Virus record (IMG/VR): IMGVR_UViG_3300028920_000022
Span: 124,001 to 188,000 of that record
Length of the DNA: 64,000 nucleotides
Strand: one strand, 5' to 3'
Part shown: positions 5,051 to 61,864 of the stretch, piece by piece
Numbering within the stretch: the stretch's first letter is position 1
Layout: each line of letters opens with the position of its first letter
The notes under the pieces: model-generated
Database searches by the model: none
What the model was told of the DNA's origin: nothing
What the model saw: the letters and a program-made list of their open reading frames with translations, nothing else
Position numbers and translations under genes: made by a program

Positions 5051-5194
5051 ATGCCAGGAAGAGATGGAACAGGACCACGTGGAAAAGGACCTAAAACAGG
5101 TAGGGGCAGAGGTACTTGTCCGCCCAGACAAAACCCCAACAAGGGACAAGGTAGAGGGCGCGGAAAAGGTAGAGGACGCGGAAAAGGAAGATAA
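5051..5194 (+). CDS. DUF5320-like Gly/Arg-rich small protein (47 aa, not in ORF track)
   Basis: MPGRDGTGPRGKGPKTGRGRGTC...GRGRGKGRGRGKGR; strong SD AAGGAG upstream. Confidence 0.75.
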   Translation: MPGRDGTGPRGKGPKTGRGRGTCPPRQNPNKGQGRGRGKGRGRGKGR

Positions 5195-5199
5195 TTAAG

Positions 5200-5213
5200 T
5201 AATATTTTTCCAT
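5200..5213 (+). promoter_or_regulatory. candidate phage-specific promoter TAAT-N7-CAT
   Basis: TAAT-atttttc-CAT, 6 nt before ATG; motif recurs at several loci. Confidence 0.55.
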
Positions 5214-5219
5214 TGAATT

Positions 5220-5576
5220 ATGAATTCAATGGAAAAAATACTGAAGCTGGCAGAATCTTTTGAGGCTGAGTTAACCAAAACCGCAAAAGGTAAAAAAGAA
5301 AAGAAAGATAAAGACCCCAAAGCAAAGACTAGAAATCGTGGAGACTGTGTATTTCCTGCAGGATCGTCCAAGGTAAAAGATGACAAAGATCATTTTCCTA
5401 TCAATAGCGAAGCTCAGGCACGCAATGCACTAGCTCGTGCCAATCAGTATAGTGCTTCGCCGCCTTGGTATTCTGGATCATTGCAGAGTCTTGTTAGTGC
5501 CGTTTCGCGCGCTGTCCACAAAAAGTACAAGGGCATTGAAGTCAGCAAGAAATCCAAGAAGCCCGGCAAAGGCTAA
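5220..5576 (+). CDS. basic hypothetical protein with KLA..F..KxA leader
   Basis: ILKLAESFEAELTKTA leader; HFPINSEAQARNALARA. Confidence 0.7.
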   Translation: MNSMEKILKLAESFEAELTKTAKGKKEKKDKDPKAKTRNRGDCVFPAGSSKVKDDKDHFPINSEAQARNALARANQYSASPPWYSGSLQSLVSAVSRAVHKKYKGIEVSKKSKKPGKG

Positions 5577-5916: not shown

Positions 5917-6215
5917 GCTTTATTGGCGAAGAATTAGAAGAATATTATAATTCCCAGTACGATAAGTATTACAATTTTGACTACGACTTTAACTACGACT
6001 TATATAAAATAAATTTTGCACACAGCTGGCAACTATGTGAAAAAGAATCTAGAGAATCTTATGACCCGGTATTTGTTTGTAAGGTTTGCGGAATTTACGC
6101 TATTGGTAAACCTACAGATCGTTATTCTCCACATGTTTACGCTTATTATACGACGAATTACGACGAGTCGACAATGTCTTGTGCTGAGATTTGTGTAAAG
6201 GATATAATCGAATGA
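5913..6215 (+). CDS. zinc-finger microprotein with C-terminal IKDIIE-type tag
   Basis: HSW..CKVCG..MSCAEICVKDIIE; GTG start inferred from GTGA overlap. Confidence 0.7.
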   Translation: MSFIGEELEEYYNSQYDKYYNFDYDFNYDLYKINFAHSWQLCEKESRESYDPVFVCKVCGIYAIGKPTDRYSPHVYAYYTTNYDESTMSCAEICVKDIIE

Positions 6216-6695: not shown

Positions 6696-8036
6696 ATGCT
6701 CACAGATGTTCCCGTTATCGATCAGAAATCTCTTGGACGTATCTTTCGCGTAGGTATTCGTGAAGGTAAAAATATTATGATTTTGGGTCCGTCTGGTGGC
6801 GGCAAAACATTTATTGCTGTGGATATCGCTCATTCAGAAGGATGTCGCCTAGTTTATATTAACTTGGCGGTATTGGAACGTACCGATTTCCAGGGGTTTC
6901 CTGTTATCTCTCAGGATAAAACACTGGTATCATACGCTACTCCTGACTTTTTGCCATTCGCCGACACCAACGAACGTGACGAAAAGAACGCTTTGGAAAA
7001 CCTCTCTACCATTCTCAATGACGCAAAAGATAAAAACATCATGGGAGAGATTGATAAGCGCTTGAATGCCGTGGAATATCGTCGTCAGGCTCGTATTATT
7101 GCGAATGCCATGCCGTACCTTTCGGAAGGCTCCCAAAAATCGCTGAAACCATACCTTAATAAGGTTCTAGCAAACCTCCCAGAAGGAAAACCAATTGTAT
7201 TCCTTTTCGATGAGGTCGATAAAGCCGCTAGCGAAACAATGCAAACTCTTCTGGAGTTCCTGCAGTTCAGAAGTATTAACGGACGCAAACTGGATATTAA
7301 GGCTTGTTTGCTGACTGGTAACTTGCCTGATGAACATGCTGCTTCTCAGCAGATTTCGCACGCCATTACGAAACGATGTAAGTCTTACAAGCTACAGTTG
7401 GACTTCAATCAGTGGCGTGAATGGGCTTATGGTCATGCCGTGCATGATTTGGTTGTTGGTTTCTTAACCGCTAACCCGGACTTTTTGCACAAGACCCCTC
7501 CAGACGGTGATCCTACTGCTTATGCTCTGCCGTCTCCTCGAACCTGGACTGACGTTAGTGATTCGTTGTGGGCTTTGGAAAAAGATAATCAATTCCAAAA
7601 GCTGAATGGCGAGGAGTTGGCTGGGTTGCAAAAACTTCTAATTGCTGGAAGCGTAGGAGACACTGCGGCAATTAAATTCGTTAACTGGTTCAAATACTAT
7701 CGTAAGATGGACCCGGTTGTGGAAGCTCTTTTGGAAAAGGGAAAGATGCCTGACCAAAAGAAACTGGACGCCCAGGAACTGTTTATCTGTGCTCTGTCGG
7801 CATGTTCCCGTGTATATAGAGAACTGAAGCCAAAGAACGAAGACAAAATTAAAAAGTATGCCAAGAATGTTTACAAGTGGATTGGTTCCCTTTCTGTAGA
7901 TATTCAAATGGGAGCTTCTCGTATGGCGTTCGGCGGAGACTTCGATAACATCCAAAAGTACCGTCTGTCGGAAATTGACGAGTTTTCCAACGTCTTCAAG
8001 CACATCAAGAAGACGATGCAAACTAATGATATCTGA
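6696..8036 (+). CDS. MoxR-like AAA+ ATPase
   Basis: Walker A GPSGGGKT, Walker B FLFDEVDKA, TGN sensor, PSPRTW. Confidence 0.9.
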   Translation: MLTDVPVIDQKSLGRIFRVGIREGKNIMILGPSGGGKTFIAVDIAHSEGCRLVYINLAVLERTDFQGFPVISQDKTLVSYATPDFLPFADTNERDEKNALENLSTILNDAKDKNIMGEIDKRLNAVEYRRQARIIANAMPYLSEGSQKSLKPYLNKVLANLPEGKPIVFLFDEVDKAASETMQTLLEFLQFRSINGRKLDIKACLLTGNLPDEHAASQQISHAITKRCKSYKLQLDFNQWREWAYGHAVHDLVVGFLTANPDFLHKTPPDGDPTAYALPSPRTWTDVSDSLWALEKDNQFQKLNGEELAGLQKLLIAGSVGDTAAIKFVNWFKYYRKMDPVVEALLEKGKMPDQKKLDAQELFICALSACSRVYRELKPKNEDKIKKYAKNVYKWIGSLSVDIQMGASRMAFGGDFDNIQKYRLSEIDEFSNVFKHIKKTMQTNDI

Positions 8037-8041
8037 GTGCC

Positions 8042-9547
8042 ATGGAAGTAATTAATAAAACAATCCTTGACCCAAAACAGTTGGGTGGGGATAAGTTCAA
8101 CGAATATAATCAAAAAATCTCGGTATCCAAAGTAGCTCTTGCAAAGAGCCCAGAAAAGGGAGGGATGCCGTTTATATTCGCCTTCACTAGCGTGAAAAAC
8201 CACACGTTAGATGAAGTGAAAATGCCGTACCTAAACAAAGACGGAGACGTAGAGTTCTCTTGTACGGCAGCAACTGATGGCAAAGAATATAAATGGAGCC
8301 CTCAGATTCTGGATATCCTGGGACCACGTGAGGTTGCAATCATCACAGCTCACGAAACCTATCATATTGTGTTACAACATTGTAATGCGCACCGTGCGTT
8401 TGGTAAACACAAAATGGCATGGGCGTTGGCGATTGACTATGTTGTCAATGGTATGATTGAACACGATTTGATTCAAAGTAATCAAATCTCTCAGTACGAT
8501 TGCGATAAAGCCAGAACAAACGGGAACCATCCTATTTGGAAGAATGGGATCGGTGGAACTAAAGGTCCGGTTTATTTCGATGAATTAATGAAGGATATCG
8601 AAAAAACCCTCAAACAACTAGCTGAAGATAAGAAAAAAGGTAAGAAATCTGTCGTTCCTACTGGAAATATTGCCGAAAAACAACCCAAACCGCAGGTTAT
8701 TCGTCCATATGCTGATTATAAGTTGTATGGTCGGTCGGCTGAGGATATTTATGATGAAATTATGAAAAAGATGGAGGAGGAAGCTAAGAAAAATGGTATG
8801 AAGCTTTCTGACCTTCTTAGTCCTGGGGATTTTCACCTGCCTGGTGGTTACGTAATTGGTGGCGGATCCATGATGGACGAACATAAAGAAAACGACATCA
8901 GCCGAACCAAACTTTTGGAAGAGGTTATGGATGCCGTTTCTGCTGCTCGTGCACTGTCTGCTGGTAATATGCCATCAGCTATTGAAGATCAGTTAAAAGC
9001 ATTACAAGAGCCAAAACTTAAGTGGCAGGATATCGTTCGCCATGCTCTGCAAACCACCCGCCAGGAAAAAGGTACGCTTAATGATTGGACGCGCATGCGG
9101 CGTCGGTTGGTTTCTTATGAAATCTTTGTGCCCAAAAAGAAGGATCAACGAGTTCGTTGGCTTTGTATGTTGGACACTTCTGGTTCTATGAGCGATGATG
9201 ATATCGTGTACGGAGTCTCACAGTTAAAAGTTTTGGACGGTAGATCTAAAGGTATTGTGGTTCCCTGTGATGCTCAGTGTTATTGGGACCATGCGGTGGA
9301 AATCCATGGCATGAGTGACCTGCCTAAGGTAAAGCCAGTAGGTAGAGGTGGCACCGTGTTTACTGATTTCTTTGAGAACTACGAAAAGAAGATCGCGGAA
9401 GAGATCGACCTAATTATTGTGATTACCGATGGATATTTGTACGATTTGGACATGAAAAAACCTGCAGTGGATTGTGTGTGGGTTATTACCAACGATAATG
9501 AGTTCAAAGCTCCGTTTGGTAGAACTGCACCCTTGCGTTCATATTGA
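8042..9547 (+). CDS. metallopeptidase-like/VWA domain protein (DUF2201-type), partner of AAA+
   Basis: TAATDG, HETYH (HExxH), MIDAS DTSGS, GRGGT, ITDG. Confidence 0.9.
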   Translation: MEVINKTILDPKQLGGDKFNEYNQKISVSKVALAKSPEKGGMPFIFAFTSVKNHTLDEVKMPYLNKDGDVEFSCTAATDGKEYKWSPQILDILGPREVAIITAHETYHIVLQHCNAHRAFGKHKMAWALAIDYVVNGMIEHDLIQSNQISQYDCDKARTNGNHPIWKNGIGGTKGPVYFDELMKDIEKTLKQLAEDKKKGKKSVVPTGNIAEKQPKPQVIRPYADYKLYGRSAEDIYDEIMKKMEEEAKKNGMKLSDLLSPGDFHLPGGYVIGGGSMMDEHKENDISRTKLLEEVMDAVSAARALSAGNMPSAIEDQLKALQEPKLKWQDIVRHALQTTRQEKGTLNDWTRMRRRLVSYEIFVPKKKDQRVRWLCMLDTSGSMSDDDIVYGVSQLKVLDGRSKGIVVPCDAQCYWDHAVEIHGMSDLPKVKPVGRGGTVFTDFFENYEKKIAEEIDLIIVITDGYLYDLDMKKPAVDCVWVITNDNEFKAPFGRTAPLRSY

Positions 9548-14634: not shown

Positions 14635-14871
14635 ATGCCACGACACTTCGAGAATATATGGGTGGAAGCCGAGAAACTCTCCGACGGGGATCTCGGCGCC
14701 ACCATCTCGAAAATTAAACAAGAGTTAGATAATATAGACAGCCCAGAAGATGCCGAATCTTTTGGGCTTGTCTTGTTTTTGTTGGCTAATATTTCTAGAC
14801 AACTAAATATCAATGTAGCCGCTGCTTTGCAACAAGCTATAAATAATTACAAGGTGGACAATTTAGAATGA
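14635..14871 (+). CDS. MazG-like all-alpha NTP pyrophosphatase (divergent)
   Basis: ESFGLVLFLLANISRQLNINVAAALQQAINNY resembles EELGDvLF..vnlAr.lgiD.e.AL. Confidence 0.55.
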   Translation: MPRHFENIWVEAEKLSDGDLGATISKIKQELDNIDSPEDAESFGLVLFLLANISRQLNINVAAALQQAINNYKVDNLE

Positions 14872-15623
14872 GTTACAAAGAACGTTATCATTATTGCAAA
14901 GAGCACGGTATTTGCCCACAATGTTCTCAGAAACATGATAGTGGTACGGTTTTGTGCCAAAATTGTTATCAAAAACAATACGGATTACACAAAGAACGTT
15001 ATCATAGGAGAGCCGCCGCAGGGTTGTGCGTCGACTGTGGCAAAAAAGCCATTGATGGCACGCGACATTGCCAGGAACATAAAGAAAGAAGTAGCGCACG
15101 AATAAGAAAATATCGCACCCAAAAGAAAGAAAAGGGTATTTGTCAGTCATGTGCTGGTCCTGCTGTGAATGGTGGGATATTTTGCGAAAAACACCGAGTA
15201 AAAAATAATAAATGGCGCACTTCTCGTAATAGAATAAGAAAACAGCAGGGAACTTGCATCTATTGTGGTGGGCAAAACGACACTACTACTCAGGTTTGTA
15301 CCGTTTGTTATTATAAATATAAGACCCTGAAAAAAGAACCAAGAGTCCCAAATCGGTTGGTAAAGTTTTTTGGAACTACACAGTGTTCTATCGCAGAATT
15401 TGAAGAGAAATGTAGTTGGTTACGAAATATTATAAATAAAAGTTGTGTTGCTAATATTTTAGACGAAAGACATAAAGATATATTGCAAGCTAGATTTGTA
15501 GACGAAAAGTTTGCTACACTACAAGAAGTTGCAACCAAACATGGCGTGTCAAGAGAACGAATTCGACAGCAGGAAGAAAAAATAATATTACTACTTCAGA
15601 ATATTATTGACATCCGGAATTAA
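14868..15623 (+). CDS. repeated Cys/His zinc-finger protein fused to sigma70 region-4 HTH
   Basis: Four G.CxxC...CxxC/H repeats; LDERHKDILQARF...TLQEVATKHGVSRERIRQQEEK. Confidence 0.8.
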   Translation: MSYKERYHYCKEHGICPQCSQKHDSGTVLCQNCYQKQYGLHKERYHRRAAAGLCVDCGKKAIDGTRHCQEHKERSSARIRKYRTQKKEKGICQSCAGPAVNGGIFCEKHRVKNNKWRTSRNRIRKQQGTCIYCGGQNDTTTQVCTVCYYKYKTLKKEPRVPNRLVKFFGTTQCSIAEFEEKCSWLRNIINKSCVANILDERHKDILQARFVDEKFATLQEVATKHGVSRERIRQQEEKIILLLQNIIDIRN

Positions 15624-16424: not shown

Positions 16425-16814
16425 ATGGATTATGCTAAAATAGAATTATTAGCTAAGAAATACGCTAAACTAGCGTTGGGTGTAGAAGAACCGACAGCAG
16501 TAGAGCTTCCACATAGGCAGCACCCCCTAGAACGCCCCCCAGAACGTACTATGCTATCCGTTACCCCAGAAGACTCTCAGCGTATACGAGAACAGGAAAT
16601 GCCAGACTTCGAATATATTCCTGGCTATGATAATTTTTCAGACGCAATAGATCACTTAAGAACAGCTACCGGCTACATCGAAGCTATTAAACCAAGTTCT
16701 TATGTAACATATTCGGCACGAGCGCTTATCTCTGATGCCGCACTTCGTATATTAAATGGCATGAAAGAAGTATATAAAGCTACACCTTCAGATAGATTGA
16801 AGGCTAGCCCATAG
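16425..16814 (+). CDS. hypothetical protein with KLA/KxA leader
   Basis: IELLAKKYAKLA leader; GCAT-N7-CAT-N6-ATG upstream. Confidence 0.65.
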   Translation: MDYAKIELLAKKYAKLALGVEEPTAVELPHRQHPLERPPERTMLSVTPEDSQRIREQEMPDFEYIPGYDNFSDAIDHLRTATGYIEAIKPSSYVTYSARALISDAALRILNGMKEVYKATPSDRLKASP

Positions 16815-17283
16815 CTTGTTTCAATAAATAAACGGACGTTTCAGCTTCATTACATTGAGCCATGATTAAATCGTCCAACCCTAAAGTTATATCGTTGCTT
16901 TCTTTCAAAGCCTCGTAAGTTTCTTTCGCAACCGATAAAAAAGCTTCTTCGATTGCTAGAGAGTTGGTTAAATGATCTTCCGAAGAATATTTGCCCACTA
17001 ACTTCTTTAATGTAGCCATCTGGTCGTTTGGATTAATGGCATCGTTTCCAAAGACTCCAATGGTTTTTTCTACGGCGGCATCTAGTCTGTCCCCAGCAGC
17101 CTCATAAATTCTTTGAAACAAAAGGTGATTCCCATAAAATTGCGGAGATTTACACAACCAGTGGCTAAACTGATGAATCGCATACACAGCTTGAATATAA
17201 GCAATATAATTATTCATTAATTTGCCAGCGCTTTTTCTGCTAGCTTCTTTTTTGATTTCTGAATACTGGTCTAATGTCGTCAT
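16804..17283 (-). CDS. Dps/ferritin-like protein
   Basis: HQFSHWLCKSPQFYGNHLLFQRIYE...LDAAVEK matches Dps ferroxidase signature. Confidence 0.8.
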   Translation of the reverse strand: MTTLDQYSEIKKEASRKSAGKLMNNYIAYIQAVYAIHQFSHWLCKSPQFYGNHLLFQRIYEAAGDRLDAAVEKTIGVFGNDAINPNDQMATLKKLVGKYSSEDHLTNSLAIEEAFLSVAKETYEALKESNDITLGLDDLIMAQCNEAETSVYLLKQAMG

Positions 17284-17315
17284 GGAGTAATCCTCTACTC
17301 CATGCGAAATAATTA
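17281..17315 (-). promoter_or_regulatory. TAAT-N7-CAT motif plus perfect 9-bp hairpin covering SD/start of Dps-like gene
   Basis: Minus strand TAAT-tatttcg-CATGGAGTA-gaggat-TACTCCATG. Confidence 0.6.
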
Positions 17316-17319
17316 CTAC

Positions 17320-17493
17320 CTATCGATAGCCAAGATTCGTAGTATTTTGGTTGTTTGGTTGCTCAATTTGAAACTTTGAATTGGGAGATATTAAAATTGT
17401 TGGAGAGACATATTCTTCATCCAAATCGCTAAGCGGTATTAGAACACGGTCATCTTGCTTTTTGATATCCAATTTTTTCATACCTACCTCCAT
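17320..17493 (-). CDS. small hypothetical protein
   Basis: MEVGMKKLDIKK...; GGAGG SD before second Met. Confidence 0.5.
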   Translation of the reverse strand: MEVGMKKLDIKKQDDRVLIPLSDLDEEYVSPTILISPNSKFQIEQPNNQNTTNLGYR

Positions 17494-17565: not shown

Positions 17566-17594
17566 TTGACACTAGCCACCGGATCCTGTATACA
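17566..17594 (+). promoter_or_regulatory. sigma70-like promoter
   Basis: TTGACA-17-TATACA. Confidence 0.55.
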
Positions 17595-17605
17595 GGAAAA
17601 CAAAA

Positions 17606-18388
17606 ATGAGACCTAAACAAAAAGATCAAAGAAGAAAAACCTCAAGACAGTTTGTTAATGTGCCGGAGGGGGTTTCCATTGTTGTTATGGGAGACGTCCA
17701 CGAACATGAGGAACAGTTCTACGCCACTCTGAAAGAGGTTCGTCCTCGTGAAGATATGTGGCTTGTATCATTGGGAGATATTTACGATAAGGGTTTTGGA
17801 ATTAAATCCGCTGAACGTATTACTGATGAGTTAATTAAACTCCAAAATAAAAACGTTTGTTATGCGGTTCGTGGTAATCATGAACTTAAACTCATTCGTA
17901 AAGCAAGAAAAACCCCCAAACTTACTCCTCAATTAAAATGGTGGTCAAACCAACCACTTGTACTTACATTTAATTTCAAAACCAGAAATACGATAACCGT
18001 ATTACACGCGGGTGTAACTCCCAACATGACCGAAGGAGATTTGGGGCATGGTGTAGAAGTTGTTTATGTTCGAGATGTGGACGAAGATGGACAAATGATT
18101 CCTTTGGTGTGGAAAGATATTAATGGAGTTCAAACTCTAGTTAAATCTAAAGAGGGTGGAAACAATTGGCATGATGTTTACGATGGAAGGTTCGGTTATA
18201 TTGTGGCTGGACATGCTGCCCAACGAGATGGAGAAGCTAAATTCTTTAATTATTCATGTAATATTGATTCTGATATTTATCAAAGCGGTAAATTAACTTC
18301 CGTTGTTTTCAATGACGAGGGTAAGTTGGTTAAAAAAATTATTATGGAGGGGATTGCGCGCAAACCCGAATTAAATATTGCTTATTGA
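17606..18388 (+). CDS. calcineurin-like metallophosphoesterase
   Basis: GDVHEH, GDIYDKG, RGNHE, HAG, GH. Confidence 0.9.
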   Translation: MRPKQKDQRRKTSRQFVNVPEGVSIVVMGDVHEHEEQFYATLKEVRPREDMWLVSLGDIYDKGFGIKSAERITDELIKLQNKNVCYAVRGNHELKLIRKARKTPKLTPQLKWWSNQPLVLTFNFKTRNTITVLHAGVTPNMTEGDLGHGVEVVYVRDVDEDGQMIPLVWKDINGVQTLVKSKEGGNNWHDVYDGRFGYIVAGHAAQRDGEAKFFNYSCNIDSDIYQSGKLTSVVFNDEGKLVKKIIMEGIARKPELNIAY

Positions 18389-22481: not shown

Positions 22482-22783
22482 TGAAAACAAGAAAAGTAAC
22501 TGCTCAAGAGTTAGATGAGTGGTTGCAAAATCATCCAGACGCCTATGTGTCAGATAGCGGGGATTTTGGTTTTTATTCTGATTGGGCGAATGAGTTGGTT
22601 TTGTGCGAGATTAACGAATTTTGTAAATCAAGTTTGGCTTCTAAAATTAGAGAAAAGTTCAAAGAAATAGCAGAAACTCAAGCATGTTAAGAATTACAAA
22701 ACGCGCTTAAAAGAGCAATGAAACTAAACTTAGATGTTTTTAAGATTGTAGATGAAGTAACGATAGAGGAAGTTATTAAATGA
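22478..22783 (+). pseudogene. paralog of 22200-22481 interrupted by in-frame TAA at 22688-22690
   Basis: QELDEWLQNHPDA; frame continues ELQNALKRAMKLNLDVFKIVDEVTIEEVIK to TGA overlapping the AAA+ start. Confidence 0.7.
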
Positions 22784-24084
22784 CCACAATTGCACAAGCA
22801 AAAGAACGTATCTTAACCAAATTGGATTGGGATAATACAGACCTAAGTTATCCGGTTATTTTGTGGGGTCCGCCGGGATTGGGGAAAAGTTTTTTGGTAG
22901 TTTCTCTTGTGTGCGAACGCATGATCGAAGATCTTAAAAAAGAATACTACGAAAAGGCTAAAGACATTACCGACAAAGAAGGCGAAGAATATCAAAAATT
23001 AACAGCAGAATTAGAAAGAAAACTCAAACTGCTTAATTTTGATGATATTACACACGAATTATTGGAGTTTATTGCGCCTCATTGTTTGGTTCTACGGTTA
23101 GCAGAACGTCCCATCGAACAGCTACAGGGTGTAGTTGTGCCATCAATGTCCGACAAGGATAATTTTGCCAGGTTTGTTATGCCAGAAAACCTAGTAAAAC
23201 TTAAGGAAAGCAAATGGGGAATAGTGTTTTTAGATGAGCTAGATAAGGCTAGCGATTCTAAATTCGGTGCAGCTACCCACATTCTAGAGAATAAAGTGGT
23301 TGGAGATCTTCAGCTTGGCAAAGGCTGGTATGTAATAGCAGCAGCAAACCGGGAAGAGGATTCTCATTTATCCAACCCAATTCCTCCGGAGCTTCGCAAC
23401 CGTTGCGCCAATATTGAAGTCGAAGGAGATTTGAATACTTGGATTAAATGGGCAGTTAAACATAATGTTCGCAAGGATATTATTCTATTTCATAAATTTA
23501 AGAATGGAGAATGGTTATGTAACTATGATCTTGAACAAACATATGCATTTCCTACCCCGAGATCTTGGGTGATGGCGAGCAGAACCATAGATCGGTTGCA
23601 GAAAAAACTTAATCCAAAACCTGACGACATTAAAGCCATGGAGAATTTCGATAATTTGGTTAGATATGAACTGATGGATTTCGTTGGCAAACAAGCTCAG
23701 GCTGAATTCTTCCAATACCGAGAAGCATATTTGAAATTTAATGTACAAGAGATTTTGGATGGAAGAAAAAGGATTGCTACCAAGGATAATTGCCCAAACG
23801 AAACCGTTCTAATAAGCGATCAATGTATTGCCGCATTTGCTATGGCAGATCAGGTCACTCCAGATATGTTGGGTAAAAAGGGAGACGAATCTCAAGCGTT
23901 TAAATTTCAAGCAGATTCGTTACGGATGAGGAATTTAACTCAGTTTATTGGTGATTTGTTACCAGAAATTCGTACCATATATCTACAACAGATTCATACT
24001 ACTAGGATAATGAATATTATAGCAGATTCTGGTTTGGCGGATGATATCATGGAAGATATAATCGAATACATAGCGGCGGCATGA
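22780..24084 (+). CDS. MoxR-like AAA+ ATPase (second copy)
   Basis: GPPGLGKS, VFLDELDKA, AAAN, LRNR, FPTPRSW. Confidence 0.9.
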   Translation: MTTIAQAKERILTKLDWDNTDLSYPVILWGPPGLGKSFLVVSLVCERMIEDLKKEYYEKAKDITDKEGEEYQKLTAELERKLKLLNFDDITHELLEFIAPHCLVLRLAERPIEQLQGVVVPSMSDKDNFARFVMPENLVKLKESKWGIVFLDELDKASDSKFGAATHILENKVVGDLQLGKGWYVIAAANREEDSHLSNPIPPELRNRCANIEVEGDLNTWIKWAVKHNVRKDIILFHKFKNGEWLCNYDLEQTYAFPTPRSWVMASRTIDRLQKKLNPKPDDIKAMENFDNLVRYELMDFVGKQAQAEFFQYREAYLKFNVQEILDGRKRIATKDNCPNETVLISDQCIAAFAMADQVTPDMLGKKGDESQAFKFQADSLRMRNLTQFIGDLLPEIRTIYLQQIHTTRIMNIIADSGLADDIMEDIIEYIAAA

Positions 24085-28284: not shown

Positions 28285-29622
28285 ATGGATACCAAAGAAG
28301 AACAAAAGATTATCGAGGAAACACGTAGGGTTTTTGCGTCGCTGGCTCTTATTGCACCATTTGCTTATCCAATGTTGGCTATGCCAATAAGATTGGACCC
28401 ACGATTACCAGCGCCTGCGGCAACCAATGGTGTAACTGTTATTATTAACCCTAAAGAATGGGAGAAGAAAACATTCAAGCAAAAAATGTTTATTGCGATC
28501 CATGAATGGATGCATATTGCTTTGCTTCATTGTAAAAAGTTGGGTAAAAAAAGAAGGGTGATGCACAATTATTGCTGTGATTTTAACATTAATTCTATGA
28601 TTCGGATTGACATGAAAGATCAATTCGAGATGCCATGTTGTCTTTTCGATCCAACATACCACAACAAATCTTCCGAAGAAATATACAAGGATTTAAATAA
28701 CGAAGTAAAGCGACGTCAAGAAGAAGGAATGACGCCATTTTGTCATTGTTGTAACAGAGAGTTTGTTAAGGGTGATTATGCGGATGGGCGCTGGAAAGAT
28801 CCTGATGTGGTTAAATGTCCTGTGTGCAAACGTCCTACGGCTGATGGAAAAGAAATACCGGAACCTGAATATGTAGACAGAGAGAACGCAATTAACCAAT
28901 TAATGGTAGAAGAGTTTGGGGCGCCTTGGGGAAACGATTTGCAGGATCTTCCAGTAGATGCGGATGAACAAAAAATAATTGATCAGGTTATGAAAGCTGC
29001 GGCAAGATGTCGTTCGCAAGGTAAAATGCCAGGCTCAATGCCGTCTTTTTATGAAGAGTATATAGAAACAATTAAAAAATCTAATGTTCCATGGTATCGT
29101 ATTTTATATAGGTACGCTAAAGAGTCGTTAAAAGGAAATACAGATCGAAATCCATTTAAACCGGACCCTAAGTATTTACCATTTGATATATTTATTCCTA
29201 CAGAAAGAGGAAGAAGAGTTAGCAAATTAGTATTAATTGTTGACACTTCTGGTTCGATGGAGACAGAAGAATTTAAATATGCAGCCGGACATATAGAAAA
29301 GTTCTGCACATTAGTAGATAATTTAACTGTCATAACTGCTGATACTATTGTACAGGAGGTGCTTCGGGTGCGGAACGTGAGGCGAGAATTAAAGAAACAT
29401 GCCTTGAAGTTTAAGGGCAGAGGTGGTACAAGGATGGATGAAGCATTTGAAGCAGCCAACAAACTGCGTCCGAGTCTGATTATTCTTTATTCTGATATGT
29501 ACATTGGTGATTTTCCCCCAAAACCGCGTGCTCCTGTTATATTTTTAGCTACCAAGGATGCAAATATTACAAAGGTACCATATGGAATTCTTCTTAACAT
29601 GGAATCGCAAGGACAATATTAA
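28285..29622 (+). CDS. metallopeptidase-like/VWA protein (DUF2201-type, second copy) with zinc-ribbon insert
   Basis: AATNG, HEWMH, CHCC..CPVC insert, VDTSGSM, GRGGT, YSDM. Confidence 0.9.
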   Translation: MDTKEEQKIIEETRRVFASLALIAPFAYPMLAMPIRLDPRLPAPAATNGVTVIINPKEWEKKTFKQKMFIAIHEWMHIALLHCKKLGKKRRVMHNYCCDFNINSMIRIDMKDQFEMPCCLFDPTYHNKSSEEIYKDLNNEVKRRQEEGMTPFCHCCNREFVKGDYADGRWKDPDVVKCPVCKRPTADGKEIPEPEYVDRENAINQLMVEEFGAPWGNDLQDLPVDADEQKIIDQVMKAAARCRSQGKMPGSMPSFYEEYIETIKKSNVPWYRILYRYAKESLKGNTDRNPFKPDPKYLPFDIFIPTERGRRVSKLVLIVDTSGSMETEEFKYAAGHIEKFCTLVDNLTVITADTIVQEVLRVRNVRRELKKHALKFKGRGGTRMDEAFEAANKLRPSLIILYSDMYIGDFPPKPRAPVIFLATKDANITKVPYGILLNMESQGQY

Positions 29623-60788: not shown

Positions 60789-60884
60789 ATGACTGATAAG
60801 AACGCAAATATCGTTATCCTGTTGGGTATTGGTTTTATAGCCGGGTTTATGGCAAGCGAATTGGTTAATTATTTCCTATATTAA
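60789..60884 (+). CDS. 31-aa single-TM peptide (not in ORF track)
   Basis: MTDKNANIVILLGIGFIAGFMASELVNYFLY; SD GGAG. Confidence 0.45.
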   Translation: MTDKNANIVILLGIGFIAGFMASELVNYFLY

Positions 60885-60895
60885 TTATCCCACAT
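60882..60895 (+). promoter_or_regulatory. candidate phage-specific promoter TAAT-N7-CAT
   Basis: TAAT-tatccca-CAT, 6 nt before ATG. Confidence 0.55.
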
Positions 60896-60901
60896 ACAAA
60901 T

Positions 60902-61864
60902 ATGTGGAAAAATTTGCTCAAAGATGCTGATTTATTTGAGAAATTTGCTAAAGCTCAGCCGATCTACATGTATCACGGAACGGCTGAGGATGTTTTGCCG
61001 AGCATTTTGAGCCAGGGACTGATTACTAATCCTAAACAGAGGGCTTGGGCAGAAGATCCTGATGCAAGTTTTTGGATGCCGTCACGCCAATCTTTACATA
61101 GTATATATTTAACCAGCAATTTATTAACGGCATTAGGTTCTGGAGGTCGCCGCCGGAACGAAAAACTAGCTAGAATTCTTCTTATAGTATCAGTACAGCC
61201 GCAATCGTTGGACGCTGATGAGGATTCGTTTATCGGCTTACGGGCAGCAACTCCGACCCACTGGTCGGAGTTTTTGGTTGCGATGGCGTATATTGAGGAA
61301 ATGTCTGGGAAATCAGACGGTACCGTGAACGACGCTGCCATGAAAAAAGATTACGTTGATACTAATCTTGAACGAATAAAGGACAAACTCAAACAGCCAT
61401 TACATCCCGCATTAGCAACGAGACTCAAGGTTCTTTTGGAAAAGTGTTATCTTCCAGCTTTGGCTCGTAAAGCAGCATATGTAGATGCTGGAAGTTGGGA
61501 ACGTGCACAATATCACTTGGAAGTTCAAAATGTAGAACAGCCCAACAAAAACAAAGCAGAACAAGAATTCAAACGTTGTCAGGACCAAGTCACTAGAACA
61601 TTACATATTTTGGCGCGTCCTGATGAGGTTAATGATTTGTTTGACTTTACTGCCAGATCAAATACACCAATTGGATTTTCTGGATCAAACAAGATCGTTG
61701 CTATCTTCAAAGAAGTTCCTAGACCAGATAGCGATTTTAGAAAATGGCTACAGCTTGTCTACCCCGATTCTGTTGATCAGATTCCAGAGGAAGCTCTCAA
61801 TAAACTTATGCAGGACTGGAATCAAACCGTAGGTCCTGGGTTACAAATATTACCGCGTAATTAA
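60902..61864 (+). CDS. ADP-ribosyltransferase-fold protein with KxA leader
   Basis: LLKDADLFEKFAKA leader; MYHGT..LPSILSQGL, IYLTS, DED. Confidence 0.6.
   Translation: MWKNLLKDADLFEKFAKAQPIYMYHGTAEDVLPSILSQGLITNPKQRAWAEDPDASFWMPSRQSLHSIYLTSNLLTALGSGGRRRNEKLARILLIVSVQPQSLDADEDSFIGLRAATPTHWSEFLVAMAYIEEMSGKSDGTVNDAAMKKDYVDTNLERIKDKLKQPLHPALATRLKVLLEKCYLPALARKAAYVDAGSWERAQYHLEVQNVEQPNKNKAEQEFKRCQDQVTRTLHILARPDEVNDLFDFTARSNTPIGFSGSNKIVAIFKEVPRPDSDFRKWLQLVYPDSVDQIPEEALNKLMQDWNQTVGPGLQILPRN

What the first reader, a model, noticed from the sequence alone, without database searches (positions are those of the whole stretch)
17281..17315. Hairpin timing switch at the Dps-like gene
Seen (minus strand): CATGGAGTA-gaggat-TACTCCATG is a perfect 9-bp inverted repeat. 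Its 3' arm contains the start codon, its loop holds the SD (GAGG), and its 5' arm begins at the CAT of the TAAT-N7-CAT motif. Applying the 6-nt spacing from other loci puts the TSS at the first loop base (17295). The cognate transcript would then lack the 5' arm and be translatable, while read-through RNA would sequester the start. Established analogy: T4 late genes e and soc are silenced this way on early transcripts. This independently supports the promoter model.
Basis: partly seen in the sequence, partly recalled or inferred. Interest (0 to 1): 0.6.

Follow-up and report, generated by a model that had tools for sequence, protein, structure and literature searches.

The report
Start-codon hairpin at phage Dps gene
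A perfect 9-base-pair RNA hairpin buries the start codon of a Dps-like gene in a 459-kb phage and is kept by compensatory changes in its closest relative; it probably silences the gene on longer read-through transcripts, as in phage T4, but the transcription start that would prove this is unknown.

Summary
On the minus strand, CATGGAGTA (17304-17296), GAGGAT (17295-17290) and TACTCCATG (17289-17281) form a perfect 9-bp hairpin. GAGG sits in the loop and the ATG of a 159-aa ORF ends the 3' arm. The protein has a Dps fold.

The hairpin appears to be under selection. The 76%-identical ortholog (L001) has a different perfect 9-bp stem, with 2-3 pairs changed on both sides. Among 68 ortholog 5' regions, these two are the most structured.

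The hairpin occurs only in the two genomes that also carry a conserved co-oriented 50-53-aa ORF just upstream. Read-through RNA from that ORF would carry the full hairpin. Three closer orthologs without that ORF have no hairpin.

A 14-nt block, TAATTATTTCGCAT, is conserved upstream of the gene in seven lineages and is probably its promoter region.

The transcription start is unresolved. The most sigma70-like reading starts at the A of CAT and keeps 8 bp. Two other readings start inside or after the 5' arm and free the start codon. No RNA data were listed.

TAAT-N7-CAT as a genome-wide promoter motif is weakly supported. Its CAT is also simply the complement of ATG, so the hairpin is not independent support for the promoter model.

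Verdict: a real, selected start-codon hairpin. A T4 e/soc-type gate is the best reading (about 0.4) but is unproven.

The parts
17296..17304 (-). 5' arm of the hairpin, CATGGAGTA. Its CAT is also the 3' end of the conserved 14-mer.
   Evidence: folds
17290..17295 (-). Loop GAGGAT, holding the Shine-Dalgarno GAGG (17295-17292).
   Evidence: P(unpaired) of the SD is 0.91 in long RNAs
17281..17289 (-). 3' arm TACTCCATG; the start codon ATG is 17283-17281.
   Evidence: ortholog N-termini align at this Met
17302..17315 (-). Conserved block TAATTATTTCGCAT, a likely promoter region without a -35 element. Candidate -10 elements are AATTAT (17314-17309), TATTTC (17311-17306) and TCGCAT (17307-17302).
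   Evidence: Identical in L001; 12/14 in L004, 10/14 in L002, 13/14 in L006; recognisable in L133 (52%) and L169 (39%)
16804..17283 (-). Dps-like (ferritin-like) protein gene, 159 aa, antiparallel to its neighbours.
   Evidence: Pfam Ferritin and DUF5856 hits below cut-off; phrog_3636, 6e-10; AF2 pLDDT 87.5; Foldseek top hits are all Dps, TM about 0.75
17320..17481 (-). Conserved small ORF (53 aa plus stop TAG 17322-17320), co-oriented and 15 nt upstream of the hairpin. It has its own SD, GGAGG (17491-17487). It is the source of read-through RNA.
   Evidence: 62% identical to the 50-aa ORF L001:600-752, with in-frame indels; absent from L002, L004 and L006
17501..17513 (-). TAATTTGCGGCAT (TAAT-N6-CAT) upstream of the small ORF. 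It may be a promoter of the same class.
   Evidence: inference only
17566..17594 (+). Divergent canonical promoter of the metallophosphatase gene: TTGACA, 17 nt, TATACA, then 11 nt to the ATG at 17606, with no SD.

Best explanation
The hairpin is an RNA structure under selection that hides the AUG of the Dps-like gene. The AUG is hidden on every transcript that contains the 5' arm, which certainly includes bicistronic RNA reading through from the conserved small ORF upstream.

The gene also keeps its ancestral promoter, the conserved TAATTATTTCGCAT block. If RNA polymerase starts inside or just after the 5' arm (about 17300-17295), those shorter RNAs lack the arm and are translatable. Which promoter is used would then decide whether Dps is made. 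This is the logic of T4 genes e, soc, 49 and I-TevI.

Shown: the structure, its stability, its maintenance by compensatory change, its co-occurrence with the upstream ORF, and conservation of the promoter-like block.

Inferred: that the block is a promoter, where transcription starts, and that the two promoters differ in timing.
For: - The 9-bp perfect stem has z = -5.2.
- L001 has CATGGGATC-AGAG-GATCCCATG, also a 9-bp perfect stem. Two pairs changed on both sides in the MAFFT alignment, and a third, innermost pair is re-formed from other columns. All cells pair, against 44% or fewer when partners are slid.
- The window and L001 are the two most structured of 68 distinct ortholog 5' regions: -16.3 and -17.1 kcal/mol against a median of -4.35.
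- The hairpin occurs only where the co-oriented small ORF exists.
- In L002, L004 and L006 the gene stands alone on its strand with only 23-178 nt upstream, so the conserved block must lie in its promoter region.
- The cost of opening SD to +13 is 14.4-14.8 kcal/mol on read-through RNA, 3.6 for a start at 17299 and 2.9 for a start at 17295.
- A stem this stable on every transcript would nearly silence a conserved gene, so some bypass is expected. This is inference.
- Other genes in the window have the same layout: an AT-rich -10-like element, then CAT beginning a stem that occludes the ATG, with a co-oriented ORF upstream (window 5205-5237 and 60890-60907).
- The phage encodes sigma-like proteins, so promoters of its own are plausible.
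- Precedent: PMC3014915, section 29.
Against: - No transcription start data exist; no RNA run was listed.
- The best-conserved sigma70-like -10 (AATWAT in seven orthologs), together with the conserved Y-A dinucleotide, predicts a start at A17303. That keeps 8 bp and a 10.4 kcal/mol opening cost.
- Short leaders without an SD exist on canonical promoters here, for example 11 nt from the -10 to the ATG at 17606. CAT-N6-ATG loci therefore need not be leaderless.
- The co-occurrence with the upstream ORF is a single evolutionary event in two related genomes.
- Only two sequences carry the hairpin, so the covariation test has no power (133 of 500 shuffles reach the observed value).
- The upstream ORF has a similar TAAT-N6-CAT in front of it, so the two promoters may not differ in timing.
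Confidence: 0.4

Rival explanations
1. The hairpin sits on all Dps transcripts. The gene's own promoter starts at or next to the CAT (A17303 or G17305), so the stem is a 5'-terminal structure. It keeps translation low or makes it conditional on a trans-acting factor, an RNA cleavage or a helicase, and it may also protect the 5' end from decay.
For: - AATWAT (17314-17309) is the only -10-like hexamer with A at -11 and T at -7 that is kept across the orthologs. It is followed at 5-6 nt by the conserved Y-A of YAT, the usual start dinucleotide.
- 4 of 11 start-codon hairpin loci have such a hexamer 5-6 nt before the A of CAT, against a 14% background (about p 0.06 by my own binomial estimate).
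- Short SD-less leaders occur on canonical promoters.
Against: - An 8-bp stem costing 10.4 kcal/mol to open would nearly shut off a conserved gene.
- This reading does not explain why the hairpin exists only where the upstream ORF exists.
- The perfect stem is unlike a tunable element.
- No candidate activator was identified.
Confidence: 0.3
2. Translational coupling: Dps is translated only when ribosomes finishing the small upstream ORF melt the stem or re-initiate, which ties Dps output to the small protein.
For: - The hairpin and the small ORF co-occur.
- There is no terminator-like site between them.
- In L001 the stop codon is 8 nt from the stem, and at window 60890 a 31-codon ORF stops 5 nt before a start-codon stem.
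Against: - In the window the stop codon (17322-17320) is 15 nt from the stem base, beyond the roughly 10 nt a terminating ribosome covers (established ribosome footprint, applied by inference).
- The stop-to-stem distance is not conserved: 15 nt in the window against 8 nt in L001.
- The Dps gene has its own SD exposed in the loop.
Confidence: 0.12
3. A DNA-level palindrome, such as an operator for a dimeric regulator or a cruciform at the promoter, or a chance inverted repeat with no function.
For: - The palindrome overlaps the probable promoter and start region.
- 9-bp inverted repeats are not rare in this genome.
Against: - The arms differ between the window and L001 while complementarity is kept, which a sequence-specific protein site would not tolerate.
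- Palindromes at other start codons share only CAT/ATG.
- Start-codon-pairing repeats are 7- to 23-fold enriched over internal ATGs.
Confidence: 0.1

Closest known systems
Phage T4 genes e (lysozyme), soc, 49 and I-TevI: an inhibitory stem at the translation initiation region that is bypassed by a late promoter inside the 5' strand (PMC3014915, section 29)
   Same: - The start codon is held in a stem.
- A promoter-like element abuts or overlaps the 5' strand.
- Upstream co-oriented transcription reads into the gene.
- The structure is kept in a close relative and absent in more distant ones, as for gene e among T4-like phages.
   Different: - No mapped 5' ends.
- The promoter is not TATAAATA, and no gp55/gp33-type late system was identified; the phage has sigma70-like r2/r4 proteins.
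- The SD is exposed in the loop and only the AUG is paired.
- The gene is a Dps-like protein, not a lysis, capsid or nuclease gene, so the reason for gating is unclear.
- The timing of the two promoters is unknown.
Translational coupling through start-site hairpins in polycistronic mRNAs (for example RNA phage MS2 and bacterial ribosomal-protein operons; from general knowledge)
   Same: The downstream start is occluded by a stem just after an upstream ORF.
   Different: The upstream stop lies 15 nt before the stem in the window, too far for a terminating ribosome to open it, and the distance is not conserved.
5'-terminal stabilising stem-loops and RNA thermometers (from general knowledge)
   Same: There would be a stem at or near the 5' end if transcription starts at the CAT, and the start codon is paired.
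   Different: Stabilisers do not normally include the start codon. Thermometers have imperfect, weaker stems, whereas this stem is 9 perfect pairs at -11.7 to -13.6 kcal/mol.

Membership tests
T4 e/soc-type promoter-dependent translational gate | A stable stem sequesters the SD and/or AUG of the gene | tested here: met
   9-bp perfect stem; P(AUG unpaired) is 0.001 in long RNAs; opening cost 14.4-14.8 kcal/mol
T4 e/soc-type promoter-dependent translational gate | Transcripts from an upstream promoter read through the stem | tested here: inconclusive
   A conserved co-oriented ORF lies 15 nt upstream and no terminator-like site lies between. No RNA data.
T4 e/soc-type promoter-dependent translational gate | A second promoter whose start lies inside or after the 5' strand of the stem | tested here: inconclusive
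   The conserved 14-mer abuts the arm. Three -10 registers predict starts at about 17303, 17299 or 17295. Only the last two remove the stem.
T4 e/soc-type promoter-dependent translational gate | The two promoters are active at different times | not testable with these tools
   No expression data. The upstream ORF also has a TAAT-N6-CAT in front of it.
T4 e/soc-type promoter-dependent translational gate | The structure is maintained in relatives | tested here: met
   L001 has a different 9-bp perfect stem with 2-3 pairs changed on both sides. The stem is absent in orthologs that lack the upstream ORF.
Intrinsic terminator | A GC-rich stem followed by a U-tract | tested here: not met
   The stem is followed by ACGACAUUAG on the minus strand and by GCGAAATAAT on the plus strand. 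The scan does not list it.
RNA thermometer | An imperfect, marginally stable stem over the SD or AUG | tested here: not met
   Perfect 9 bp, -11.7 kcal/mol in the window and -13.6 in L001
Translational coupling hairpin | The upstream stop codon is within ribosome reach of the stem | tested here: not met
   15 nt in the window and 8 nt in L001
Dps / ferritin-like protein (the gene product) | A four-helix-bundle Dps fold | tested here: met
   AF2 pLDDT 87.5; Foldseek top hits 2c41, 5hjh, 8ff9, 1dps and others, TM 0.7-0.77. Pfam hits are below the curated cut-offs. Ferroxidase residues were not examined.

The most novel reading that the evidence does not exclude
This 459-kb phage uses start-codon hairpins as a general device. 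At several genes (Dps at 17281-17304, and window 5205-5237 and 60890-60907), a phage-specific promoter without a -35 element would start transcription at or just before the start codon. That would give leaderless or near-leaderless mRNA, while the same sequence folds into a perfect stem that silences the gene on operon read-through RNA. This would generalise the T4 e/soc trick and couple it to leaderless translation in an uncultured huge phage.
Probability: 0.2. Interest if true: 0.55.

Novelty: new member of a known kind. Interest (0 to 1): 0.35.

Why it matters
If the gate is real, promoter-dependent unmasking of ribosome sites is not a T4 peculiarity. It would also be used by very large uncultured phages that carry their own sigma factors. 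It would also give a handle on their otherwise unknown promoters and temporal classes: the position of the 5' arm marks where transcription must start.

It would also suggest that production of a phage Dps-like protein has to be kept separate from that of the small protein encoded just upstream. If instead the stem is on all transcripts, the locus is an ordinary translational attenuator.

Tried and rejected
- RNA evidence: the look-up of sequencing runs listed no RNA run, so read laying could not be used.
- Near relatives in the phage records: none by megablast.
- Exact scans of viral contigs with the 14-mer and the 16-mer gave only chance hits. No locus from the 14-mer scan encodes a Dps relative, and the 16-mer hits lie in unrelated sequence contexts; that sequence can encode the peptide NYFAW.
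- The genome search on the relatives' records: those records are not held.
- The 320-aa gene has no relative in viral contigs. The 118-aa gene's 61% ortholog has neither the motif nor the hairpin.
- Motif discovery: a Gibbs sampler collapsed. An EM search found mainly the junctions of about 60 tandem small paralog genes (...GGA NAT AAT NGA ATGA). These are coding sequence, not a promoter, and they inflate the CAT-N6-ATG count.
- TTCGCAT/ATGCGAA is not a repeated intergenic motif.
- A Fur/PerR-box reading of the 14-mer was rejected by eye because it is not palindromic.
- A sigma54 reading was rejected because there is no GG element at -24.
- The terminator reading was rejected because there is no U-tract.
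- The distribution of -10-to-ATG distances in SD-less genes did not separate leaderless from short-leader classes.
- My first reading of the 17606 promoter as leaderless was wrong. The -10 lies 11 nt from the ATG.

Full report
**What is there.** The window is bases 124001-188000 of a single 458,729-bp virus contig with 39.5% G+C. CheckV rates it complete, and the contig is Ga0272441_10000008.

On the minus strand, CATGGAGTA (17304-17296), GAGGAT (17295-17290) and TACTCCATG (17289-17281) form a perfect 9-bp inverted repeat. The last three bases are the ATG of a 159-aa ORF, 16804..17283. GAGG in the loop lies 8 nt before that ATG.

The product is Dps-like. Pfam Ferritin and DUF5856 hits fall below their cut-offs and phrog_3636 scores 6e-10. 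An AlphaFold model with pLDDT 87.5 has Dps proteins as all its best PDB matches, at TM about 0.75.

**Is it more than chance?**
- As RNA, the 35-nt stretch folds at -12.8 kcal/mol, z = -5.2.
- The stem survives in 146-nt and 301-nt read-through RNAs.
- A 9-bp perfect repeat alone is not remarkable. The genome has about 32 distinct ones, against 10-20 nested counts in simulated genomes.
- Repeats that pair a start codon are enriched. Stems of 7 bp or more occur at 8 of 481 ATG starts against 0.23% of internal ATGs. Stems of 9 bp or more occur at 5 of 481 against 0.05%.

**Relatives.** Protein searches gave orthologs at 76% (L001), 69% (L002/L003), 67% (L004/L005), 60% (L006/L007) and many at 52% or less. 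In the four closest lineages the gene is antiparallel to its neighbours.

- *The stem is kept by compensatory change.* L001 carries CATGGGATC-AGAG-GATCCCATG, again 9 perfect pairs ending on the ATG. Two pairs changed on both sides, and the innermost pair is rebuilt from other columns. With two sequences the shuffle test has no power, but slid controls pair at 44% or less against 100%.
- *The stem is lineage-specific.* L004, L002 and L006 have no structure. Among 68 distinct ortholog 5' regions, the window and L001 are the two most structured.
- *The stem co-occurs with an upstream ORF.* The window and L001 are also the only genomes with a co-oriented small ORF just upstream (window 17481..17320, 53 aa; L001 600-752, 50 aa). 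The two are 62% identical with in-frame indels, so this is a real gene. The scan found no terminator-like site between it and the Dps gene.
- *A 14-nt block is conserved.* TAATTATTTCGCAT, directly upstream of and overlapping the arm, is identical in L001 and nearly so in L004, L002 and L006. It is recognisable in L133 (52%) and L169 (39%). In the genomes where the gene stands alone, with only 23-178 nt upstream, this block must lie in its promoter region.

**The promoter model.** TAAT-N7-CAT as written is weak.
- It is no more frequent genome-wide than other spacings.
- It is about 2.5-fold enriched upstream of genes, like other AT-rich combinations.
- CAT at exactly -9 from the start codon is enriched (17 of 201 upstream regions against about 3). 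Part of this comes from about 60 tandem small paralog genes whose conserved C-terminal coding sequence (...GGA NAT AAT NGA ATGA) overlaps the next start.
- A tighter form, TAATWWT-N4-CAT, is mostly intergenic and sense-oriented (12 of 24 copies in the 11% of the genome that is intergenic). It has no shared -35 element.
- In the 59% ortholog of one such gene, neither the TAAT-CAT nor the CAT-ATG spacing is kept.
- The phage has no RNA polymerase beta or T7-type polymerase hit, but it encodes sigma-like proteins.
- It also has canonical TTGACA-N16-18-TAnnnT promoters that lie 5-11 nt from SD-less ATGs. These give leaderless or very short leaders.
- CAT is the complement of ATG, so any stem that pairs a start codon contains it. 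The hairpin is therefore not independent support for the motif.

**Where does transcription start?** This decides the interpretation, and it could not be measured because no RNA run was listed. Three -10 registers fit the conserved block.

| Register | -10 element | Predicted start | Stem left | Cost to open SD..+13 |
|---|---|---|---|---|
| R1 | AATTAT (17314-17309); AATWAT in seven lineages, with A at -11 and T at -7 | A17303 of the conserved Y-A | 8 bp | 10.4 kcal/mol |
| R2 | TATTTC (17311-17306); TATATT or TATAAG in L004, L133 and L002 | about 17299 | 4 bp | 3.6 kcal/mol |

Read-through RNA costs 14.4-14.8 kcal/mol to open.

R1 is favoured by promoter resemblance. Three points favour R2 or R3:
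- A perfect stem on every transcript would nearly silence a conserved gene.
- The stem exists only where read-through RNA exists.
- Other genes repeat the layout. At window 5205-5237 a 15-bp perfect stem has the ATG as its triloop. At window 60890-60907 a 7-bp stem pairs the ATG. Both follow co-oriented ORFs.

**Mechanism.** My best reading, at about 0.4, is a promoter-dependent translational gate of the T4 e/soc/49/I-TevI type (PMC3014915, section 29). RNA from the small-ORF promoter carries the full stem and does not make Dps. RNA from the gene's own promoter starts inside or after the 5' arm and does make it.

Rivals:
- The stem is on all transcripts and acts as an attenuator or conditional element (0.3).
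- Coupling to translation of the small ORF (0.12). This is weakened by the 15-nt gap between stop codon and stem in the window, against 8 nt in L001.
- A DNA palindrome or chance (0.1). This is weakened by the compensatory changes.

The "timing" part is the least supported, because the small ORF is preceded by a similar TAAT-N6-CAT (17513-17501).

**Verdict.** If true, it is a new member of a known kind.

Noticed in passing
window 5205-5237 (+): A perfect 15-bp hairpin, TTTTTCCATTGAATT / ATG / AATTCAATGGAAAAA (-14.5 kcal/mol). Its triloop is the start codon of a 118-aa ORF (5220-5576). It is preceded by TAATAT (5200-5205) and by a Gly/Arg-rich co-oriented ORF ending at 5192-5194. It is not conserved in the 61% ortholog L208.
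   Followed up: partly
window 60890-60907 (+): CCACATA-CAAA-TATGTGG pairs the start codon of a 320-aa ORF (60902-61864). A 31-codon hydrophobic ORF (60789-60884) stops 5 nt before the stem. The 59% ortholog L220 has CATATA-TG-TATATG on its start, but with different TAAT-CAT and CAT-ATG spacings.
   Followed up: partly
window 17566-17608 (+); also G000 56280, 56802, 69465, 114208, 137899 (window 13899), 375202: Canonical TTGACA-N16-18-TAnnnT promoters lie only 5-11 nt from ATGs that have no Shine-Dalgarno sequence. This phage appears to use leaderless or very short-leader mRNAs for a set of genes.
   Followed up: partly
G000 28-48 kb (minus strand); window junctions at 6212, 13419, 22478, 24524, 27028, 32143: About 60 tandem small paralog genes with overlapping stop/start (ATGA) and a conserved C-terminal coding motif (...GGA NAT AAT NGA ATGA). 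They mimic a promoter-like cassette in motif searches.
   Followed up: partly
window 4085, 41220, 50458, 63967 and elsewhere in G000: The 8-mer TTGTCGAG is about 9-fold enriched upstream of genes and strand-biased (15 copies on + against 4 on -). No fixed downstream partner was seen. Its function is unknown.
   Followed up: no
window 14868-15623 (+); G000 351278-351937 (+): Two sigma-like proteins: one has Sigma70 region 4 plus zinc ribbons, and one has weak region 2 and region 4 matches (phrog_351). No RNA polymerase beta or T7-type polymerase hit was found in the genome.
   Followed up: partly
window 17320-17481 (-): A conserved 53-aa ORF of unknown function (MKKLDIKK...NLGYR). It is present only in the window and in L001, and has no PHROG match.
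   Followed up: partly
window 6696-9547 and 22780-24084 / 28285-29622 (+): Two sets of ATPase (phrog_1297) and HNH-endonuclease-like (phrog_1314) genes, which look like duplicated modules.
   Followed up: no
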